From positions 142,258 to 206,257 of the IMG/VR virus record IMGVR_UViG_3300045961_000282: a stretch of 64,000 bases of DNA; one strand, 5' to 3'. Made by a program: the position numbers and the translations under genes. The notes under the pieces were generated by a model. That model did not search any database, was not told the origin of the DNA, and saw nothing but the letters and a program-made list of their open reading frames with translations. Below are positions 2,430-54,111 of this stretch, piece after piece; the first letter of the stretch is position 1, and the number at the start of each line of letters is the position of its first letter.

Positions 2430-3093
2430 CGCCAAAGCCTATCAACCTATCCACCCATGCCCCCTCCGGTGCTACGCAGCGTATCGGTGCGGGCACCCCC
2501 GCTAGGGGGTGGGTGGACCCGAGGGTTCGACAGCGACGAGGCGGCACCGCGGGTCCCGCGGGTTCCGCGGGTTCGACAGGCGGGGCGGGACTCTTCCCGG
2601 GGGCGGATACGTGGCAAAGGCGAAATCGCAGATTTCGGCTGATGGTGGAGCCGTTCCGCAGGAACGGATACGTTACGTAGCAGGACTTGAATTTTTTGAT
2701 AGGTGGGGAGGGGGGACCCCCTAGGTATCCCACCGCCCCCCCAAACGTTTCCTGAAAGTGCCGGGGGGGTTCGGTCCAACGGTGCGTTTCGGTCCAACGG
2801 TGGCAACGGTGCAACGGCCCCCACCGACCCCGGTCGCGCGCACGGGAGGCGGGGGGATCGTTTCGGTTCGAGGGTTTCGGACGGTTCCGGTCCCCATCGG
2901 CCCAACGGGACAACCGGACGTCAATCGTGTTCGTCGAATCACGTCGGGGCCAATGGATGCATGGCCCCCAAGCCAAGGGGCAGGCAAGGGGGGCCTCAGG
3001 GGGGCGAGGGAGCCTAGGGGCAGGCACAGGGGCTGGGCAGGACAAGCAAAAGGCCCCTAGGACCTGTGGGGTCCTAGGGGCCTCTGCTGGGGG

Positions 3094-7330: not shown

Positions 7331-9175
7331 TTACCGCCTGCCCTTGTACGGAGAACGTTTTCCGAGGTTCGCTGCCCCTAGTGGCGGCAACCGATAGGCA
7401 GACATTGAGCGGGCACGCAGATTAGAATTGACGGCAAATGAAGCGCCCTTGACCTTGGTGGTGAGGGCCAGCGACGCCCAGACCATCGCGTCGAGACGTC
7501 CCGGAGATACCTTGGATTCCGCGGGGACCCATGAGGTGATCTCGGATTCCAACAGCGGGTGGTAGTTCAGCATATGCAGGCGGCCCTGCTCAGCAAGGGC
7601 CGCCACCGGCTCGGCGCGGGTTGCCTTGCCTGCTCGGGCGTGCACGATGTAGACCGGCACGTTGGCATTCACCTGTCCGATGGCCATGCGGACCAGTTCG
7701 CCGCCCTGATTCCCCTCGGCCACCACTGGGCCGCCCCACTTGATCGCCATGTCCACGACCCGCTTGGCCCAGACCGCCGGGCTGCCCAGCACGGTCGCAT
7801 CCTCCACGACGTAGAGTTGGCGGCGGTAGAAGTCCCGCTCGGCGGTTCCCTTCACCACCACGATGCCCGCCTCGTCCTTGGGGCGCTCAGCAACACTGGG
7901 ATCGACCCCGATCACCGTGTGCATCTTGATCCCGCCCGGCAGTTCGGTCACCCGTGCCGCATCGAGGTCGGACTGCATGAACAGCGCGCCCTCGATGTCG
8001 TGCAGCATCTCGCCCATCAGTTCCTGCTGGCCGATCCGGGTCCCTTCGTACAGGCCGAGGATCGTGGCGCGGAAGGACTGCGCAAGGTTGGCGAGGTTGT
8101 CATATGTCGTTCCACGGGTGATGACGATGCCGAACTCAGGATTCTCGGATTCCTCCAGCAGTTGGAACATCGAGGGAACGCGTCGCGGCGTGGTCGTGGC
8201 AACCATACGCGGCATGTCGCCATCAACCGGAAGTCGTAGACCCAGCCGCAAGTTGGCGAACGCCGTCAGACCATCGGCGCCGGAGACCTGCGGGTAGGAA
8301 GCAAACTCGTCGCAGTTGTGAATCAAGACTCCGGCGGCATAGAACTCCGGCGCTCCGTTGATCGTGAGGTCATAGACATTGGCTCGACCCGCCGGGCGCA
8401 CGGAAGCAACAGGAAACAGGGTGGTGCTCGAGTCTGTGCTGAGGCGGACGTGAACCATATCCCCGGCCTCGAGGTCGGCGGCCTGAACCCACGTGTCCCG
8501 CCTCGATTCGCTCGCCACCAACACGAGGTGATCGGGGGTGCAGCGCAATGTCGTCGGCCCGGCCTCGATCTCCACCACCTCGCGGTCGGTTCCCGTGCGC
8601 TGTGCGCGCGCGACCGGCCAGAAGCCGGAACGGGTGAGCACTTTCATCCCCGGCTGGATCTGTTCGATGGGCAGCGGCCCCAGCGAGGTGAGTACCGGCT
8701 CCCCTTCGGCTACGCACCACGCGGTGTCGAACTGGGGACCACGCAACTGGTCCGGCTCGTCGGCGGAGAAGGCCAATGCATACGCGCCGTTCGGCCACGA
8801 CACCCGGCGCTTGGATGGCTCCCAGACGGGTACCTCGCCGGGTCGGGAGGACTCGATGATCCCCGACGGGCCGTTGACCATGACATCGCGGACGTCAGCA
8901 GCGGTGCGGCCCAGCAGCGCGATTCGCCTGCCGTGGCCATCGCGGACCCGTTCATTGATCCACTCAGCGGCGGTTCTCGTTTTCCCCCAACCCCGCCCTG
9001 CCATCGCCAGCCAAAGCACCCAGTCTCCGGACGGAGGGGTCTGGGAGGGCCTCCTCCAGAAGGCCCAATCGTGTATCAGCGACTCGGCATCAACCCCTTC
9101 AAGGGTCGCCTCGCGCTCCTCAGGGGGAAGCAGGGCGATGCGTTGGGCCATCGAGAGTTCGTGGCCGTAGGTCAT
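7331..9175 (-). CDS. Terminase large subunit containing a mini-intein
   Basis: Walker A AGRGWGKT, LRGPQF..AW[intein]CDE Walker B, ATTTP, nuclease GVDPS and C-terminal SPGRLDA. Confidence 0.93.
   Translation of the reverse strand: MTYGHELSMAQRIALLPPEEREATLEGVDAESLIHDWAFWRRPSQTPPSGDWVLWLAMAGRGWGKTRTAAEWINERVRDGHGRRIALLGRTAADVRDVMVNGPSGIIESSRPGEVPVWEPSKRRVSWPNGAYALAFSADEPDQLRGPQFDTAWCVAEGEPVLTSLGPLPIEQIQPGMKVLTRSGFWPVARAQRTGTDREVVEIEAGPTTLRCTPDHLVLVASESRRDTWVQAADLEAGDMVHVRLSTDSSTTLFPVASVRPAGRANVYDLTINGAPEFYAAGVLIHNCDEFASYPQVSGADGLTAFANLRLGLRLPVDGDMPRMVATTTPRRVPSMFQLLEESENPEFGIVITRGTTYDNLANLAQSFRATILGLYEGTRIGQQELMGEMLHDIEGALFMQSDLDAARVTELPGGIKMHTVIGVDPSVAERPKDEAGIVVVKGTAERDFYRRQLYVVEDATVLGSPAVWAKRVVDMAIKWGGPVVAEGNQGGELVRMAIGQVNANVPVYIVHARAGKATRAEPVAALAEQGRLHMLNYHPLLESEITSWVPAESKVSPGRLDAMVWASLALTTKVKGASFAVNSNLRARSMSAYRLPPLGAANLGKRSPYKGRR
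8315..8716 (-). mobile_element. 134-aa mini-intein (Hint domain only) in the terminase Walker B motif
   Basis: Starts CVAEG, block B TPDH, block F VYDLTI, ends IHN followed by Cys+1; removal restores AW-CDE. Confidence 0.93.
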
Positions 9176-9247
9176 GGGGCGAACCATATCCCGCCGTCTC
9201 GGGTGTCAACCGCGGTTCATGCTCGATTCACGCGCGATGAATCCCGC

Positions 9248-11739: not shown

Positions 11740-12555
11740 ATGAGTTATCCATGCGAGGTCGAAGGTTGCCATCGGGGAGATGCATCCCGCCTCAGGGGAA
11801 CGGAGGGCCCCCGCTTGTGCACCACCCACAAGCGGCAAATCAAGACGCGGGGCGAGGTGTGGCTGGTGGAAAAGTGGGTGAAGCCGCCCACCTGCGAAGG
11901 ACCGGAATGCGACCGGGAGCCGAGGTTGCGCATCAAGGAAAGCGGGATCTGGCTGTGCAACTCCCACCGAATGCAACTGGCGAACGGGAAGCCGCTGACT
12001 CCGATCGGATCGACAGTTCATCGCGCCCCTGCGCGACCGGAACGCCTCGCCCGAGAGTCCGACAAGGATCTGGCCCTGCGGCAGATGGTGGTCACCCCCG
12101 AACTGATCGGGAGGTTCTGGAGCAAGGTGGACGTTCGGGGAAGGGATGAGTGCTGGGAATGGAAGGCGTCGTTGACGGCGAGCGGATATGGGCAGTTCAG
12201 CCTTCGCTTCAAAGGCAAGTCCGTTCCTGTACCCGCCCACCGCGTGGCCAGAAGGTTCACCGAGGACGTGTCGGGGAAATGGGTGCTCCACTCCTGCGAC
12301 AACCCCCCGTGCGTGAATCCTCAACACCTGCGGGTGGGGACGTCGAGCGACAACAACTCGGACATGGTCAAACGTGATCGTCATGTCTACGGCTCACGCA
12401 ATCCCGTGGCCAAGGTGTCCGAAGAGCAGGTCAGCGAGATCAAGGCGCGCATCCGTGCCGGAGAACAGTTCACGGTGATCGCCGAGGACTACCCGATCTC
12501 TGCAGCGGGAATCGGGCACATCGCCGCTGGTCGCTCGTGGCGCCACGTCGAGTGA
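11740..12555 (+). CDS. HNH homing endonuclease
   Basis: FWSKV..CWEW, VLHSCDNPPCVNPQHL..GT..DN, C-terminal HTH. Confidence 0.92.
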   Translation: MSYPCEVEGCHRGDASRLRGTEGPRLCTTHKRQIKTRGEVWLVEKWVKPPTCEGPECDREPRLRIKESGIWLCNSHRMQLANGKPLTPIGSTVHRAPARPERLARESDKDLALRQMVVTPELIGRFWSKVDVRGRDECWEWKASLTASGYGQFSLRFKGKSVPVPAHRVARRFTEDVSGKWVLHSCDNPPCVNPQHLRVGTSSDNNSDMVKRDRHVYGSRNPVAKVSEEQVSEIKARIRAGEQFTVIAEDYPISAAGIGHIAAGRSWRHVE

Positions 12556-12586: not shown

Positions 12587-13012
12587 CTACTGGGCGAAGG
12601 GCATGAAGTAGACCTCGATGAGTTCGTGCTCCAACAGGTGGAGGACCTGATCGAGAACCGAGAGCGTAGTGGACAGGTGAGCCCGGGCGCGCGACACGTC
12701 CATCGGGTTCGGGTTGCTTCCGTCGCGCATCAGCCGACCGATGGCGTCGTCGGCCTTGATCACCCGGATGCGCGCACGCGAGAAGGTGTCGGCGACGAAC
12801 TGGGGATGGTGGCCCGCGGCGATCTCGAGGCTGTCGTCGCCCGCCTCCTCGAGTTTGGTCATCAGGGTCACCACCCCGGCCAGTCGGTACCCGGCGTCGG
12901 CGAGGATGCGCTCGTTGGCCAGCGCGGCGTAGGTGTCCAGATGCAGCAGGGCGCTGGTGATCCCCTCCACCGCCTCGCGGATCAACGGGAGGAGGATGCG
13001 GTTGTCGGTCAC
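12587..13012 (-). CDS. Hypothetical protein
   Basis: Last gene of a coupled minus-strand operon. Confidence 0.7.
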   Translation of the reverse strand: MTDNRILLPLIREAVEGITSALLHLDTYAALANERILADAGYRLAGVVTLMTKLEEAGDDSLEIAAGHHPQFVADTFSRARIRVIKADDAIGRLMRDGSNPNPMDVSRARAHLSTTLSVLDQVLHLLEHELIEVYFMPFAQ

Positions 13013-13398
13013 CGCAGGGCAGTCCTCGGAAGTGCGTACACCTCGGATCCAGCGAGGAGCGTCCCGGCGTAGGCAACCGAGCGGGCGAGGATGTCGACCT
13101 CGTCGCGCAGCGATCCGACCGGGACGATGCGGTCGGTCAGGTGCCGATGCGCCATGTACGCGCGCGACCGGAGATCGGTGAGCAGCGAGGTCGGGTCGAA
13201 CGGGCTGACCACGACCGCCCCGCCAAGGAGCACCACGACGTTCGACAGGGACTCATGGGCGATCTGTACCTGCTTGTGCGCTTCGGTCCAATCGGCCTCG
13301 TCACCGCGACGGGTGTAGGCGTTCAGCAGCGCTCCTGCCCCGCTCAGCCTGATCTCGGCGCGGGCCACCAGTTGCTCGATCTCGTCGCCGAGCCTCAT
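13009..13398 (-). CDS. Hypothetical protein
   Basis: ATGA/GTGA coupling on both sides. Confidence 0.7.
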   Translation of the reverse strand: MRLGDEIEQLVARAEIRLSGAGALLNAYTRRGDEADWTEAHKQVQIAHESLSNVVVLLGGAVVVSPFDPTSLLTDLRSRAYMAHRHLTDRIVPVGSLRDEVDILARSVAYAGTLLAGSEVYALPRTALR

Positions 13399-13880
13399 CG
13401 CATCGGCCCCCAGACCTCGCGGACCGACCCGTCGGGCAACTCGATGCGCTCGTGGGACATCCAGCGCACCGGGCAGCGCAGCGGGTAGTGCGGGATGGGG
13501 CGCCCCATGCTGTGCACGGCTCCTCGTGCGGTGTCGACGGAGATCCACTCGGTGAACATCCCGTCGGGCATCAAGTGGACCTCGATCCGCTCGGCGGCGT
13601 GGATCGTGCCGTTCAGGTAGTGGCGCATGTCCCCGACGGTGATCCTCCCGTGGATCACCGCGTCGATCTCGATCTTGGCCTGGGACAGGCCGAACCGGAA
13701 AAGCATCAGGTCGTTCGGGTAGCCGATGTAGGTCACACCCTGCGGATCACGCAGCACATCGAGGTCGTCGGCCAGTTGGACAAACTCCTCGTGGCGAGCC
13801 GGTCCGTTGGGCATCCGGAAGATCATGTCCATCCGCTCCAACAGCGGGACTGTGAAGTCCGCGGCGTTCAGCGCGCCCAT
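13395..13880 (-). CDS. Hypothetical protein
   Basis: Operon context, high GC3. Confidence 0.7.
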   Translation of the reverse strand: MGALNAADFTVPLLERMDMIFRMPNGPARHEEFVQLADDLDVLRDPQGVTYIGYPNDLMLFRFGLSQAKIEIDAVIHGRITVGDMRHYLNGTIHAAERIEVHLMPDGMFTEWISVDTARGAVHSMGRPIPHYPLRCPVRWMSHERIELPDGSVREVWGPMR

Positions 13881-14239
13881 ACGGGTCCCCCATCACTCAG
13901 CGTCGGGAACCGCGAATCCGGCGGCATGGCATGACCCTCGACCCGGCGCGCGAGGTTGAGGGCGGCTTGGACGAAGGTGAGCGCCCACACCCCGGTGGTG
14001 GGGTCGAAGCGGTTCTCGAGGATCGCGCGGATCTCCTCCTCGGCCCGGTACAGGTGCGCGCACATCTCCTCCAGCACCTCAGCCGGGGCGACGTAGTGCA
14101 CCCGCCTCCCCTCGCGGACGCGCCGCAGGTCGTCGGCGATGGCGCGAAGTCGAACCGGGTCGTTGGGCAGGGTGTTCAGCGCCGCCTGCAGGTCGTCGGC
14201 CAGCGGCTCGATCTGCCGGTAGACGCTCGTCATGCCCAC
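13868..14239 (-). CDS. Hypothetical protein
   Basis: Operon context. Confidence 0.7.
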   Translation of the reverse strand: MGMTSVYRQIEPLADDLQAALNTLPNDPVRLRAIADDLRRVREGRRVHYVAPAEVLEEMCAHLYRAEEEIRAILENRFDPTTGVWALTFVQAALNLARRVEGHAMPPDSRFPTLSDGGPVWAR

Positions 14240-14613
14240 TCCCGGCCCTTCTGGTCCACGGCGATGATCCAGTTCGTCCTCGGCAGGACATGGACCTCGA
14301 TCTCGGTCGCGGCGGCGTACGCCTCGGTGAGGAAGTGCATCGCCCAGTGCTGGGCCTCCTCGACCTCAGTGCCGTTGCGGGCGGTCATCAGCAGGGAGAT
14401 CTCTCTCTTGGTCCGATCGAGGTTGATCCGCAGGGTCCGCTCCCGACCGAGCGGCCCGACGTAGACGAAGGACGATCCCTGAGCCAGCCGGTAGAGGGTG
14501 TCAACAATGGCATACAGCGGAGTCTTATCGTTGTGGCACACCTTGAAGGCCGAGCGCAGGTCCTCGATGATCGGACCCACCATCGAGTCGGCAGTGGTAG
14601 TAGTGGTGATCAT
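14230..14613 (-). CDS. Hypothetical protein, leaderless
   Basis: TGCTATGCT 6 nt before ATG. Confidence 0.7.
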   Translation of the reverse strand: MITTTTTADSMVGPIIEDLRSAFKVCHNDKTPLYAIVDTLYRLAQGSSFVYVGPLGRERTLRINLDRTKREISLLMTARNGTEVEEAQHWAMHFLTEAYAAATEIEVHVLPRTNWIIAVDQKGREWA

Positions 14614-14724
14614 CCCCAAAGCATAGCAGGCCGGTCGCGCGCACCCGGGGGGCTCGAATCCACGACCCGACATGACAGAGGCCCCGAACCGCTTGACACG
14701 GGTCGGGGCCTCTGAAAAGGTTTG

Positions 14725-15243
14725 GTCCGTCTACGACAACCTCTGGGTCCCATGGTAATCCCGAACCGTGGCGCACGTCAAGCGTATTGACGCCCTGAGC
14801 GCGATGATCTGGGGCAGACCGTGGATATGCAGAGAGACCCTCCTGCATACAGGGAGCCGGGGATAGCAAGGGACCTCCGTCTTTGATCGGGAGGCCCCCC
14901 TACGAAATAGGGGGAGAAGGCCGTCAGAGGGCTAGTCAAGTTGAGCGTCCACCCGAGCGGGTTTCAGGAGCACCATCCCGCCACAGGCACAGAGGTGGGC
15001 GCATTGTTATGGCCCCGCAGGGATGCGGGATCCCAGCAGACCGTGCTGGCAGGGAGTAATCGCCCTGTCTATGGGCGCACCCGAGAGGTGCGTGCGGAAC
15101 ATCCGCCCTTGAGAATCCTCAGTTGCCGTACCCAGTTCAACGATTGCTAATCCGCGAACTGGGTCGGCTCCTTGAGGATCGACCAGAACCCGCAGATCAA
15201 GGCCTCCCATGGGTTCCACAGATACAGGGAACTGCGGGACCCG
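14725..15243 (+). ncRNA. Candidate large structured non-coding RNA (~520 nt)
   Basis: Ten or more hairpins or nested stems, several GNRA-type loops on +, hairpin-type TTGACA promoter upstream, no convincing CDS. Confidence 0.5.
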
Positions 15244-15480
15244 CTAGATCTGCAGGTGCTTCCTGATATTGCTTTCCGTAACAGCCTTCCCACTCATCTC
15301 AAGTTCCATCGCCGCCATCAGCACGGCTCGATCAAGTGGGTCCATGGCGAGGAGCGCGTCCAAGGTTGGTCCTCCGCCCGCTTGAATGTCGGCTAGTAGC
15401 GCTCTGTTCCGCTCCTTGTTCGTCTCCATCCGAACCTCTCGGCTGGGTGGACGCTTGCGCTTCTTGCTCTTTGGACTCAC
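15244..15480 (-). CDS. Small basic hypothetical protein
   Basis: TAAGAT just upstream of GTG (leaderless). Confidence 0.55.
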   Translation of the reverse strand: MSPKSKKRKRPPSREVRMETNKERNRALLADIQAGGGPTLDALLAMDPLDRAVLMAAMELEMSGKAVTESNIRKHLQI

Positions 15481-15726
15481 GTGGAAATCTTATCAACCGA
15501 CCCACCTCGCGTAGGGGCGCGCGACCGGAAAGCGATCGCTCGAGGTCCTCCGTCTTCACTGAACATCGGGATATGGTTCGCCCATGTCTTCTCCGCCGCG
15601 CCTGTCCATCCAGCGCCCCGGCCAGCAGCCGACCTACTGTGCTGGCTGCGGGAAGTGGCCAGCCGATCACAACGGCCCTGATGGCGCCCGCTACTGCGGC
15701 GACTGCCATAAGCGACTGTTCGGGTC

Positions 15727-17107: not shown

Positions 17108-17156
17108 GGCAAAAAGCGAACCCCCCGTACCGAACTGGTACGGGGGGTTCGTCGTC

Positions 17157-18063: not shown

Positions 18064-18270
18064 TCAACAATCCGATTCCGGCTCCTCGAGCCCCTTCTCA
18101 GGCGCGCGCGACCGGCGCCGATTCCACCAGAGACGGATCGGGACGATGGCGAAAACGCCGATGGCTAGGGCGATCTCGGCCAGCAGCGACCACACAAGGG
18201 TTGCAAACTGATCTGGAGTCAGGGCCAAAGGAAAAGCCCCCTCGACCAGCAGGTCGAGGGGGCTTTCCAT
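18064..18270 (-). CDS. Small membrane protein
   Basis: GGAG RBS, one TM segment. Confidence 0.55.
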   Translation of the reverse strand: MESPLDLLVEGAFPLALTPDQFATLVWSLLAEIALAIGVFAIVPIRLWWNRRRSRAPEKGLEEPESDC

Positions 18271-22889: not shown

Positions 22890-22999
22890 CCCCGAAGGCC
22901 CCCGGGAAACCGGGGGCCTTCGTCATTGCCGCGTTTGACGTTTGACACAACGGGCATACTGGAATGAGCACGACCACCAACAACACGAAAGGACCACCT

Positions 23000-24209: not shown

Positions 24210-24322
24210 TCCCCCCAGCCAGAAGCCCCAGCGAAACCCGCTGGGGCTTCTTGACTTTTGGGGCCAGAATCGGTATCGTAGATACGCGATAGAGAACACG
24301 ACCAACACGAAAGGACAACGAC

Positions 24323-25551: not shown

Positions 25552-25646
25552 ACAGCACGGAGCCCCGGTTCCCCATCAAGGGAACCGGGGCTTCGTCGTT
25601 GGTGCAGGAGCCCGGCACTGTCGCTTCAATGCCGGGCTCCTGCGGC

Positions 25647-32776: not shown

Positions 32777-32833
32777 CCCCACGCGCAAAGGCCCCCCGCA
32801 TCCGACATGGGATGCGGGGGGCCTTTGCCGTGC

Positions 32834-37861: not shown

Positions 37862-37933
37862 ATCCGAGAGCGCAGGTTGAGCCGGACGGTCTCCAAAACC
37901 GTCTTCGTGAGAGTTCGAATCTCTCCTCGGGTG
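37862..37933 (+). tRNA. tRNA-Trp(CCA), CCA end not encoded
   Basis: Acceptor ATCCGAG/CTCGGGT, anticodon arm ACGGT-CTCCAAA-ACCGT, T arm GAGAG-TTCGAAT-CTCTC; atypical D arm; TTGACA/TATGCT promoter upstream. Confidence 0.85.
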
Positions 37934-54044: not shown

Positions 54045-54060
54045 CAGTAGATGAGACAAT

Positions 54061-54088
54061 AGCCCCAGCCCTGTGATGGGCTGGGGCT
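54061..54088 (+). terminator. Intrinsic terminator-like hairpin
   Basis: AGCCCCAGCCC-TGTGAT-GGGCTGGGGCT. Confidence 0.6.
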
Positions 54089-54111
54089 ATTGTCCTTCCC
54101 GAGGAGCCACG

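What the first reader, a model, noticed from the sequence alone, without database searches (positions are those of the whole stretch)
14725..15243. Candidate ~520-nt highly structured non-coding RNA with its own promoter
Seen: almost continuous pairing, including CGTCAA/TTGACG, TATGCAG/CTGCATA, CCCCCTA/TAGGGGG, long-range CCTCTG/CAGAGG, GCGTCCACC/GGTGGGCGC, CCCGCA-GGGA-TGCGGG, CCAGCA/TGCTGG, CAGGG/CCCTG, GCGCACC/GGTGCGT, ATCCTCA..ACCCAGTTC/GAACTGGGT..TGAGGAT and CCCGCAG/CTGCGGG. GNRA-type loops favour the + strand. It follows a hairpin-type TTGACA promoter (14693, imperfect -10 AAAGGT) but lacks the usual RBS leader. I see no tmRNA, RNase P or group I/II intron hallmarks. Phages are known to carry large RNAs (GOLLD, ROOL); a new class here is inference.
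Basis: partly seen in the sequence, partly recalled or inferred. Interest (0 to 1): 0.8.

Follow-up and report, generated by a model that had tools for sequence, protein, structure and literature searches.

The report
Conserved large structured phage RNA
A roughly 500-base gene-free stretch of a giant high-GC phage genome is kept almost unchanged in unrelated sediment and soil samples, with mutations that preserve its hairpins, so it is very probably a new large folded RNA of unknown job.

Summary
Folding energy alone is only mildly unusual (z about -2.7 to -3.4). The real evidence is comparative. DNA contigs from three other sediment and soil metagenomes carry window 14676/14786-15180 at about 87-95% identity. 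Both flanking proteins have no relatives among 5.8 billion proteins. An 89-nt core (14894-14982) is invariant in all four copies.

Seven hairpins are kept through compensatory substitutions and paired indels: 3 compensatory pairs per relative against 0.07 and 0.28 expected. Relatives carry frame-breaking 1-nt indels, codon-position GC periodicity collapses, and no gene was called here, so it is not coding. No Rfam 15 family matches, and ARAGORN finds no tmRNA.

I read it as a new family of large structured non-coding RNA. The + strand is favoured by retained GNRA loops, A-rich loops, G·U pairs and the consensus fold, but this is unproven. The upstream GC hairpin looks like the genome's terminators and belongs to the conserved block. 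No RNA run was listed, so no transcript data exist, and function is unknown.

The parts
14676..14714 (.). GC-rich 12+3 bp hairpin (CAGAGGCCCCGA...TCGGGGCCTCTG) with TTGACA in the loop. It is terminator-like and forms the left edge of the conserved block.
   Evidence: Local fold -30.8 kcal/mol, z -5.5. It is the same type as other post-gene hairpins in the window. The X2 contig aligns from exactly 14676. No U-tract follows, and it is not listed by the terminator scan.
14716..14722 (+).
   Evidence: It is two mismatches from the phage's TATGGTT element and is not among the one-mismatch sites near the region. Function untested.
14741..14862 (+). 5' domain: a long stem enclosing hairpin CGTCAA/TTGACG (14776-14792) and hairpin TATGCAG/CTGCATA (14826-14849).
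   Evidence: Local fold -54 kcal/mol, z -2.5. The pair 14827/14848 changes A-T to G-C in X4.
14870..14897 (+). Hairpin GGG.CCTCC / GGAGGCCC.
   Evidence: Predicted by the local fold. Two compensatory pairs: 14875/14893 C-G to T-A in X2 and X4, and 14876/14892 T-A to C-G in X2.
14894..14982 (+). Invariant 89-nt core. It holds hairpin CCCCCTA-CGAAA-TAGGGGG (14896-14914), hairpin GGCC-GTCAGAG-GGCT (14919-14933), the 5' strand of helix GCGTCCACC (14945-14953) and a 15-nt loop TTTCAGGAGCACCAT.
   Evidence: No substitution or indel is listed here for X2, X3 or X4, while the surrounding sequence differs by about 10%. The X3 contig covers 14889-14982 with a single difference, at 14893.
14994..15002 (+). 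3' strand GGTGGGCGC of the long helix with 14945-14953.
   Evidence: Present in the MFE and centroid folds. T14948·G14999 becomes T-A in X2, and X2 also gives a C·A at 14949/14998.
15014..15029 (+). Hairpin CCCGCA-GGGA-TGCGGG with a GNRA tetraloop.
   Evidence: 15017/15026 changes G-C to A-T in X2. In X4, C15018T gives a U·G pair and the loop changes GGGA to GAGA, which is still GNRA.
15033..15049 (+). Hairpin CCAGCA-GACCG-TGCTGG.
   Evidence: Present in the MFE and local folds. It is invariant in the relatives, so covariation cannot be tested.
15048..15069 (+). Hairpin GGCAGGG / CCCTGTC with a GUAA-containing loop.
   Evidence: X4 deletes one G and one C on opposite strands. X2 deletes the G and turns its partner C63 into a loop A. 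G15049·T15068 becomes G-C in X4. The hairpin refolds in both relatives.
15075..15093 (+). Hairpin GCGCACC-(C)GAGA-GGTGCGT.
   Evidence: 15077/15091 changes G-C to A-T in X4. The X4 deletion at 15079 plus C15080G and T15089C give a perfect 7-bp stem capped by a GAGA tetraloop.
15094..15106 (+). Hairpin GCGGA-ACA-TCCGC.
   Evidence: The X4 version GCGGC-AGCA-GTCGC keeps 5 bp through an insertion plus T15102G and C15103T, with one G·U pair.
15115..15179 (+). Long 3' hairpin: ATCCTCA/TGAGGAT, GCCG/CGGC and ACCCAGTTC/GAACTGGGT.
   Evidence: Local fold z -3.3. The stems are unchanged in the relatives. Substitutions fall in the terminal loop (15144-15148), and a 13-nt insertion in X4 falls in the internal loop (15117-15125).
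15180..15243 (+). Less conserved 3' tail with hairpin CCCGCAG...CTGCGGG / GGGTTCC...GGGACCC. It ends at the stop codon of the 78-aa ORF.
   Evidence: Relatives drop below 80% likeness after about 15180, although their loose ends remain recognisably similar. Fold.
14619..14642 (-). Flank, not part of the element: GCGCGCGACCGG followed by TATGCTT, 5 nt before ATG 14613 of the 127-aa gene. This is the promoter of the next minus-strand operon.
15244..15493 (-). Flank: the 78-aa ORF (GVG start GTG 15480) preceded by TAAGATT (15493-15487) at the 5-nt spacing typical of this phage's leaderless genes. JGI called a 61-aa version.
   Evidence: The protein is an ORFan.

Best explanation
Window about 14676-15243 is the gene for a previously undescribed large (about 500-570 nt), multi-domain structured non-coding RNA carried by a 206-kb high-GC (actinobacterial-type) jumbo phage. 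It is most likely transcribed from the + strand, antisense to its neighbours.

Shown:
- It does not code for protein.
- It is conserved in sequence far beyond its flanks, across unrelated environmental samples.
- At least seven of its hairpins are maintained by compensatory substitutions and indels.

Inferred:
- It acts as a free-standing, trans-acting folded RNA.
- The invariant 89-nt core (14894-14982), together with helix 14945-53/14994-15002, is the functional centre, either a binding or a catalytic surface.
- The peripheral hairpins capped by GNRA-type loops (GGGA/GAGA, GAGA, GUAA, CGAAA) brace the fold through tertiary contacts. This is how the other large phage-borne RNAs (GOLLD, ROOL) build compact particles.

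Its molecular target is unknown.
For: Conservation:
- 20 public runs from 16 studies (sediment, soil, lake, marine sediment) hold 5-100% of the 31-mers of 14600-15300.
- When three of them were laid on the window, contigs aligned only to 14676-15180, at about 87-95% identity. Nothing aligned to 14600-14671 or 15200-15300.
- The two flanking proteins have no relative among 5.8 billion proteins.
- 14894-14982 is invariant in all copies.

Covariation:
- Compensatory pairs number 3 in X2 (0.07 expected, 0 of 20000 permutations) and 3 in X4 (0.28 expected, P = 0.0016). They make 5 distinct pairs in 4 hairpins.
- After the listed indels are applied, 7 hairpins refold in both relatives, including a paired G/C deletion.

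Not coding:
- Relatives carry 1-nt indels inside conserved sequence.
- No gene was called here.
- Codon periodicity is lost.
- The only frame open across the core has no protein homologue in two searches.

Not a known family:
- Rfam 15 gives nothing at gathering score or at E <= 10, apart from chance hairpin hits.
- ARAGORN finds no tmRNA.
- No similar DNA occurs in 50,697 phage or 72,556 plasmid records.

+ strand:
- The GGGA loop changes to GAGA in X4, at the free N position of GNRA. The neighbouring hairpin resolves to a GAGA tetraloop in X4.
- Unpaired A outnumbers unpaired T, 88 to 53.
- Four G·U pairs are compatible only with +, against one A·C.
- The consensus fold of window plus X4 is -152.0 kcal/mol on + and -137.6 on -.
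Against: - There is no transcript evidence: no RNA run was listed.
- Only three relatives could be examined. They were seen through a difference table, not as sequences. The X2 list is incomplete (14 substitutions and 10 indels not shown).
- Five to seven listed substitutions per relative break a predicted pair in my composite structure.
- The core is invariant, so its structure is untested.
- No recognisable promoter lies on +.
- Transcription-unit logic fits the - strand: leaderless 78-aa gene, then the element, then a GC hairpin, then the promoter of the next operon.
- The single-sequence MFE is 10 kcal/mol lower on -. Summed hairpin energies are equal on the two strands.
- The mechanism (free-standing particle, functional core) is argued from analogy, not tested.
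Confidence: 0.6

Rival explanations
1. The functional RNA is the minus strand. It would be either a long structured 3' UTR of the leaderless 78-aa gene, or an RNA processed from that transcript. It would end at the GC hairpin 14714-14676, which acts as an intrinsic terminator just before the promoter of the 127-aa operon. Its loops would then be pyrimidine-rich (UCCC/UCUC, UCUCG, UUUCG). Loops of that kind could pair with purine-rich ribosome-binding sites, as C-rich loops of Gram-positive small RNAs do.
For: - TAAGATT lies 5 nt before GTG 15480, and TATGCTT lies 5 nt before ATG 14613. Both match this phage's promoter-to-start spacing.
- The hairpin is of the same type as hairpins that follow stop codons elsewhere in the window.
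- It is conserved with the element in X2.
- The single-sequence MFE is -233.6 on - against -223.6 on +.
- One X2 change (G14998A) is tolerated only on -.
Against: - The 78-aa protein has no relatives while the element is widespread, so the two are not a conserved unit.
- GNRA-type loops, and their pattern of variation, occur only on +.
- Loops are A-rich on +.
- The consensus fold favours + by 14 kcal/mol.
- No U-tract follows the hairpin on -.
Confidence: 0.25
2. It is a DNA-level element. Candidates are a single-strand origin or priming signal, a recombination or packaging site, or a small non-autonomous mobile element. Its hairpins would form in single-stranded DNA.
For: - The same about 400-500 nt block occurs in contigs whose flanks are not alignable, as a mobile or cassette-like element would.
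- Compensatory changes would also preserve DNA hairpins.
Against: - There are no terminal inverted or direct repeats, and no second copy in the window.
- Exact core words occur once in the 206-kb contig.
- No transposase or recombinase gene is adjacent.
- Many separate short hairpins with GNRA loops and G·U pairs are typical of RNA, not of DNA sites.
- An invariant 89-nt core flanked by variable hairpins is unlike a MITE.
Confidence: 0.08
3. It is an ordinary non-functional spacer in a GC-rich genome that merely looks structured, or a decayed or short protein-coding region.
For: Other 519-nt windows of this genome reach z -2.9. High-GC DNA always offers many pairings.
Against: - It shows 87-95% identity in other metagenomes, with an invariant 89-nt core, while its flanks are unique.
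- Compensatory changes are far above permutation expectation.
- Relatives carry frame-breaking indels.
- There are no protein homologues.
Confidence: 0.04

Closest known systems
ROOL RNA (Rfam RF03087) and GOLLD RNA (RF01998), large ornate RNAs often carried by phages and prophages
   Same: - Size class: about 500-800 nt.
- Many-hairpin, multi-domain architecture with GNRA-type loops.
- Location in a phage genome, in a gene-free gap.
- No known function.
- Found mainly through metagenomes.
   Different: - There is no sequence or structure match to either covariance model, even at E <= 10.
- The host range differs: a high-GC, actinobacterial-type phage (WhiB, Lsr2), against Firmicutes, rumen and lake sources.
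- It is not next to tRNA genes; the nearest is 23 kb away.
- Multimer or cage formation is untested.
Candidate structured RNAs predicted en masse in IMG/VR (Fremin et al. 2023, PMC10690425)
   Same: The kind of evidence is the same: an intergenic region of a viral contig, with conservation and covariation.
   Different: - That study clustered intergenic regions of 2.38 million IMG/VR contigs.
- In the viral collection searched here, exact core words occur only in the source contig, so this RNA would not have formed a cluster there.
- I could not compare sequences with their supplement. No paper in the library holds the core words.
Intrinsic terminator followed by a promoter (for the 14676-14722 part only)
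   Same: It is a GC-rich stem of the GGCCCC/GGGGCC type seen after many genes in this window. A promoter for the next operon follows it on the minus strand.
   Different: - No U-tract follows on either strand.
- It is conserved as part of the RNA block in another metagenome.

Membership tests
Structured non-coding RNA (generic criteria) | Sequence conserved beyond its flanks in independent genomes | tested here: met
   Contigs of X2, X3 and X4 align to 14676-15180 only, at 87-95% identity. The flanking proteins are ORFans.
Structured non-coding RNA (generic criteria) | Base pairs maintained by compensatory change | tested here: met
   There are 5 distinct compensatory pairs. Permutation gives P < 5e-5 for X2 and P = 0.0016 for X4. 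Seven hairpins refold in the relatives. Only 2-3 relatives were available, and no R-scape test was possible.
Structured non-coding RNA (generic criteria) | No protein-coding signature | tested here: met
   Relatives carry 1-nt indels, no gene was called, periodicity is lost and there are no protein homologues.
Structured non-coding RNA (generic criteria) | Discrete transcript with defined ends and strand | not testable with these tools
   No RNA run was listed.
GOLLD (RF01998) / ROOL (RF03087) | Match to the family covariance model | tested here: not met
   cmscan of the window at gathering score, and of 14400-15600 at E <= 10, gave no hit.
GOLLD / ROOL | Frequent adjacency to tRNA genes in phage or prophage | tested here: not met
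   The only tRNAs lie at 37862 and 45294.
tmRNA | tRNA-like domain plus tag reading frame (ARAGORN, Rfam tmRNA clan) | tested here: not met
RNase P RNA | Match to the Rfam RNase P models | tested here: not met
Group I / group II intron | Match to the intron models and interruption of a host gene | tested here: not met
   There is no Rfam hit. The element lies between a stop codon and a promoter, not inside a gene.
Riboswitch or 5' leader | Lies directly upstream of, and on the same strand as, the gene it controls, within one transcript | tested here: not met
   On + the next gene (15584) has its own TATGGTT promoter at 15572, and an opposite-strand gene lies between. On - a terminator-like hairpin and a promoter separate it from the 127-aa gene.
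IscB/TnpB omega RNA (HEARO) | Adjacent IscB/TnpB nuclease gene and a match to the HEARO model | tested here: not met
   The neighbours have no such domains. The HNH gene at 11740 is 2 kb away and phage-type. There is no Rfam hit.
This phage's own promoters | TATGGTT-type -10 element (at most one mismatch) upstream of the RNA start | tested here: not met
   AAAGGTT has two mismatches. No site within one mismatch lies in 14630-15570 on either strand, apart from those serving the flanking genes.
Intrinsic terminator (hairpin 14676-14714) | GC-rich stem-loop followed by a U-tract | tested here: inconclusive
   The stem is strong and of the genome's terminator type. There is no U-tract, and the scan does not report it.

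The most novel reading that the evidence does not exclude
This is the founding member of a new class of large (about 0.5 kb) ornate phage RNAs, found in phages of high-GC bacteria from sediments and soils. Its 89-nt core is held invariant because it is a catalytic centre, or a precise docking surface for a conserved host machine. Like GOLLD and ROOL, it may assemble into a higher-order RNA-only particle.
Probability: 0.4. Interest if true: 0.8.

Novelty: new variant of a known kind. Interest (0 to 1): 0.6.

Why it matters
Bacterial and phage RNAs of 400 nt or more with complex conserved folds are few: rRNA, RNase P, tmRNA, introns, OLE, GOLLD, ROOL, raiA and HEARO. Each has led either to new biochemistry or to a lasting puzzle.

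This candidate has three useful properties:
- It comes from a part of the virosphere, high-GC jumbo phages of sediments, where no such RNA is catalogued.
- It has an unusually invariant core that gives a clear handle for mutagenesis and structure work.
- It appears in many public metagenomes, so a deep alignment, and from it a reliable structure, should be obtainable from existing data.

Tried and rejected
Homologue retrieval failed in every collection I could read:
- Exact core words (20-, 19- and 22-mers) hit only the source contig in viral contigs.
- One viral scan was wasted on a mis-registered pattern.
- A loop-based pattern hit three identical 37%-GC contigs. The match lies inside a 1513-aa ORF and is a chance match.
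- In genome contigs the 20-mer found nothing. The 19-mer found 27 loci that share only the word.
- In metagenome contigs the 18-mer found nothing. A stem-degenerate pattern found 25 loci with no further similarity.
- blastn against phage and plasmid records found nothing.

Reaching relatives through proteins also failed:
- Both flanking proteins are ORFans.
- I tried translating the only frame open across the core, to catch spurious ORF calls on relatives' contigs. It found nothing.
- The nearest terminase relative (53% aa, L058) has no similar sequence within 10 kb either side.

Other negative results:
- No paralogue in the window.
- Thermodynamics does not decide the strand.
- The F6 sRNA and miRNA 'hits' at 14675-14715 are generic hairpin matches far below gathering score.
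- The sigma-70 scan's minus-strand site, TTGACG-18-TACCAT at 14781-14752, does not resemble this phage's own promoters.
- A literature search for the core words and for large phage RNAs found no description.

Full report
**Where it is.** The window is the last 64 kb of IMGVR_UViG_3300045961_000282, a 206,257-bp viral contig from a freshwater sediment metagenome. It is a high-GC tailed phage. It carries a large terminase (7331-9187), WhiB, Lsr2, two sigma-70 region-4 proteins, an MmeI-type methyltransferase, a polynucleotide kinase-phosphatase domain and two tRNAs. It has no nucleotide-level relative among 50,697 phage records. The finding lies in a 570-nt gap. On one side is the start of a minus-strand 127-aa gene (ATG 14613). 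On the other is the stop of a minus-strand 61/78-aa gene (15244). JGI's gene caller placed no gene in the gap.

- All the listed pairings exist, and most are in the predicted folds.
- The stretch folds better than its dinucleotide shuffles on both strands, with z -2.69 on + and -3.11 on -.
- It had the lowest z of 20 equally long windows that I sampled across the window (-3.38).
- Ordinary coding windows reached -2.95, so in this GC-rich genome stability alone would not carry the claim.
- The region is non-coding by three tests. No frame is open for more than 100 codons. Codon-position GC periodicity collapses from 0.3-0.58 to 0.15-0.23. The only frame open across the conserved core has no homologue in either of two very large protein searches.

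**Comparative evidence.**
- A k-mer index of public runs lists 20 runs from 16 studies that hold part of 14600-15300. The environments are sediment, soil, lake, runoff and marine sediment. One run is the probable source.
- I laid the contigs of four of them on the stretch. X2 gave two contigs covering 14676-15173. X3 gave short contigs over 14889-14982 and 15129-15180. X4 gave a 3,340-nt contig that aligns from 14786 to 15180, with 35 mismatches and 17 gap positions. X7 gave nothing.
- Nothing aligned to the 75 nt left or the 100 nt right of the element. Both flanking proteins have no relative among 5.8 billion proteins. The non-coding stretch is therefore far better conserved than the genes around it.
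- Within it, 14894-14982 shows no listed difference in any copy, while the rest differs by about 10%.
- Relatives carry many single-base indels (14985, 15054, 15063, 15079, 15097, 15117 and others). Conserved coding is therefore excluded.

**Covariation.**
- I used helices predicted from the window sequence alone. Against these, the listed substitutions give five distinct compensatory pairs in four hairpins: 14827/14848, 14875/14893, 14876/14892, 15017/15026 and 15077/15091.
- I permuted substitution positions among like bases. Each relative has three compensatory pairs, against 0.07 expected for X2 and 0.28 for X4, giving P < 5e-5 and P = 0.0016.
- After the listed indels are applied, seven hairpins refold in both relatives.
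- One hairpin loses a G and a C from opposite strands. A second loses a bulged base and becomes a perfect 7-bp stem with a GAGA loop. A third swaps A-U for C-G through an insertion.

Limits:
- Only two to three relatives were available.
- They were read from a difference table. The table omits 14 X2 substitutions and 10 indels.
- Five to seven substitutions per relative break a pair in my composite model.
- The invariant core cannot be tested.

**Which strand?** The + strand is favoured.
- The GGGA tetraloop becomes GAGA in X4, a change at the free position of GNRA.
- A second hairpin carries GAGA, a third keeps GUAA, and a fourth has CGAAA. The complements are unremarkable pyrimidine loops.
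- Unpaired positions hold 88 A against 53 T.
- Four G·U pairs exist only on +, against one A·C.
- The two-sequence consensus fold is 14 kcal/mol better on +.

Evidence against +:
- The single-sequence MFE is 10 kcal/mol better on -.
- Hairpin energies summed over the variants are equal on the two strands.
- The local transcription logic fits -.

I put + at about 65-70%.

**The promoter claim.** While looking for repeated words near the ends I found two motifs that define this phage's transcription signals.
- TATGGTT occurs 38 times against 1.1 expected. It usually appears as sgTATGGTTcgcc, five bases before a start codon, which suggests leaderless genes.
- GCGCGCGACCGG occurs 25 times against 0.14 expected. 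In eight places it lies 55-71 nt upstream of a TATGGTT.
- The 127-aa gene has GCGCGCGACCGG followed by TATGCTT, five bases before its ATG. The 78-aa ORF has TAAGATT five bases before GTG 15480.
However, it differs from TATGGTT at two positions. No site within one mismatch serves the element on either strand.
- The hairpin holding TTGACA (14676-14714, -30.8 kcal/mol, z -5.5) is of the same GGCCCC/GGGGCC type as the hairpins that follow many genes here. It is conserved with the element in X2 from exactly its first base.

The hairpin is therefore either the 5' stem of a + RNA or the terminator of a - transcript. The 'own promoter' is not supported.

**What it is not.**
- Rfam 15 (4,227 families) gives only two tRNAs at gathering score. 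At E <= 10 the region gives nothing but generic hairpin hits.
- ARAGORN finds no tmRNA.
- It does not interrupt a gene, and it is not next to a nuclease, a reverse transcriptase or tRNAs.
- It is not positioned as a leader of any gene.
- It has no second copy in the window.
- No relative turned up in the viral, genome or metagenome collections, or in phage and plasmid records, despite ten scans. The nearest terminase relative lacks it nearby.
- No paper in the library contains its core words.

**Interpretation.** The best reading is a new family of large structured non-coding RNA carried by phages of high-GC bacteria in sediments and soils. By analogy with GOLLD and ROOL, I infer a free-standing folded RNA. 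Its invariant core would be the working surface, and its GNRA-capped hairpins would brace the fold. This mechanism is inference and its target is unknown.

The main rival is a minus-strand RNA: a long 3' UTR, or an RNA processed from one, ending at the GC hairpin. A DNA-level element and a chance spacer are much less likely.

Noticed in passing
window, 38 sites, e.g. 3866, 9188(-), 10219(-), 15572, 22279, 25180, 36107, 39003: TATGGTT occurs 38 times against 1.1 expected. It usually appears as sgTATGGTTcgcc, about 5 nt before an ATG or GTG. It looks like the -10 element of phage promoters for leaderless genes. The variant TATGCTT occurs 14 times.
   Followed up: partly
window, 25 exact sites, e.g. 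6506, 8606, 10088, 13160, 14642(-), 15517, 22224, 25123, 36046, 45449: The 12-mer GCGCGCGACCGG occurs 25 times against 0.14 expected. Nineteen copies are on the + strand regardless of gene direction, many of them inside genes. In 8 places it lies 55-71 nt upstream of a TATGGTT, with CTCGAG palindromes between. It resembles operator or stoperator-type sites. The binding protein is unknown.
   Followed up: partly
window 12587-14613 (-): A tandem array of five small ORFan genes (121-161 aa) lies directly left of the element. The first three are clear paralogues (26-28% identity, with a shared ...IEVH.MP motif) and the last two are weaker. There are no Pfam or PHROG hits and no relatives in the protein database.
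   Followed up: partly
window 15244-15493 (-): The ORF right of the element was called as 61 aa by JGI. TAAGATT lies 5 nt before GTG 15480, which fits the phage's leaderless-gene pattern, so the 78-aa form is more likely.
   Followed up: partly
window 3051-3083, 17117-17151, 18233-18266, 22893-22922, 24221-24251, 25557-25596, 32785-32828, 54055-54094: A family of perfect 13-19 bp GC-rich hairpins of the type (A)AGGCCCC...GGGGCCT(T) follows genes. They are probable bidirectional intrinsic terminators, mostly without long U-tracts.
   Followed up: no
window 14640-14661: GGGGGGCTCGAATCCACGACCCG resembles a tRNA T-arm and T-loop (GGNTCGAATCC), between the hairpin and the 127-aa gene promoter. ARAGORN calls no tRNA here. 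It could be a remnant or chance.
   Followed up: no
window 11740-12555 (+) and the window's larger ORFs generally: A free-standing HNH homing-type endonuclease lies 2 kb left of the element. Elsewhere the window encodes an intein-containing protein, an MmeI-like methyltransferase, Lsr2, a PNKP-type phosphatase and two sigma-70 region-4 proteins.
   Followed up: no
L060:2512-2534, L061:4943-4965, L062:4857-4879: Three 37%-GC IMG/VR contigs share an identical stretch that contains the element's 16-nt loop word GTTTCAGGAGCACCAT. It lies inside a 1513-aa ORF and has no further similarity, so it is a chance match.
   Followed up: yes
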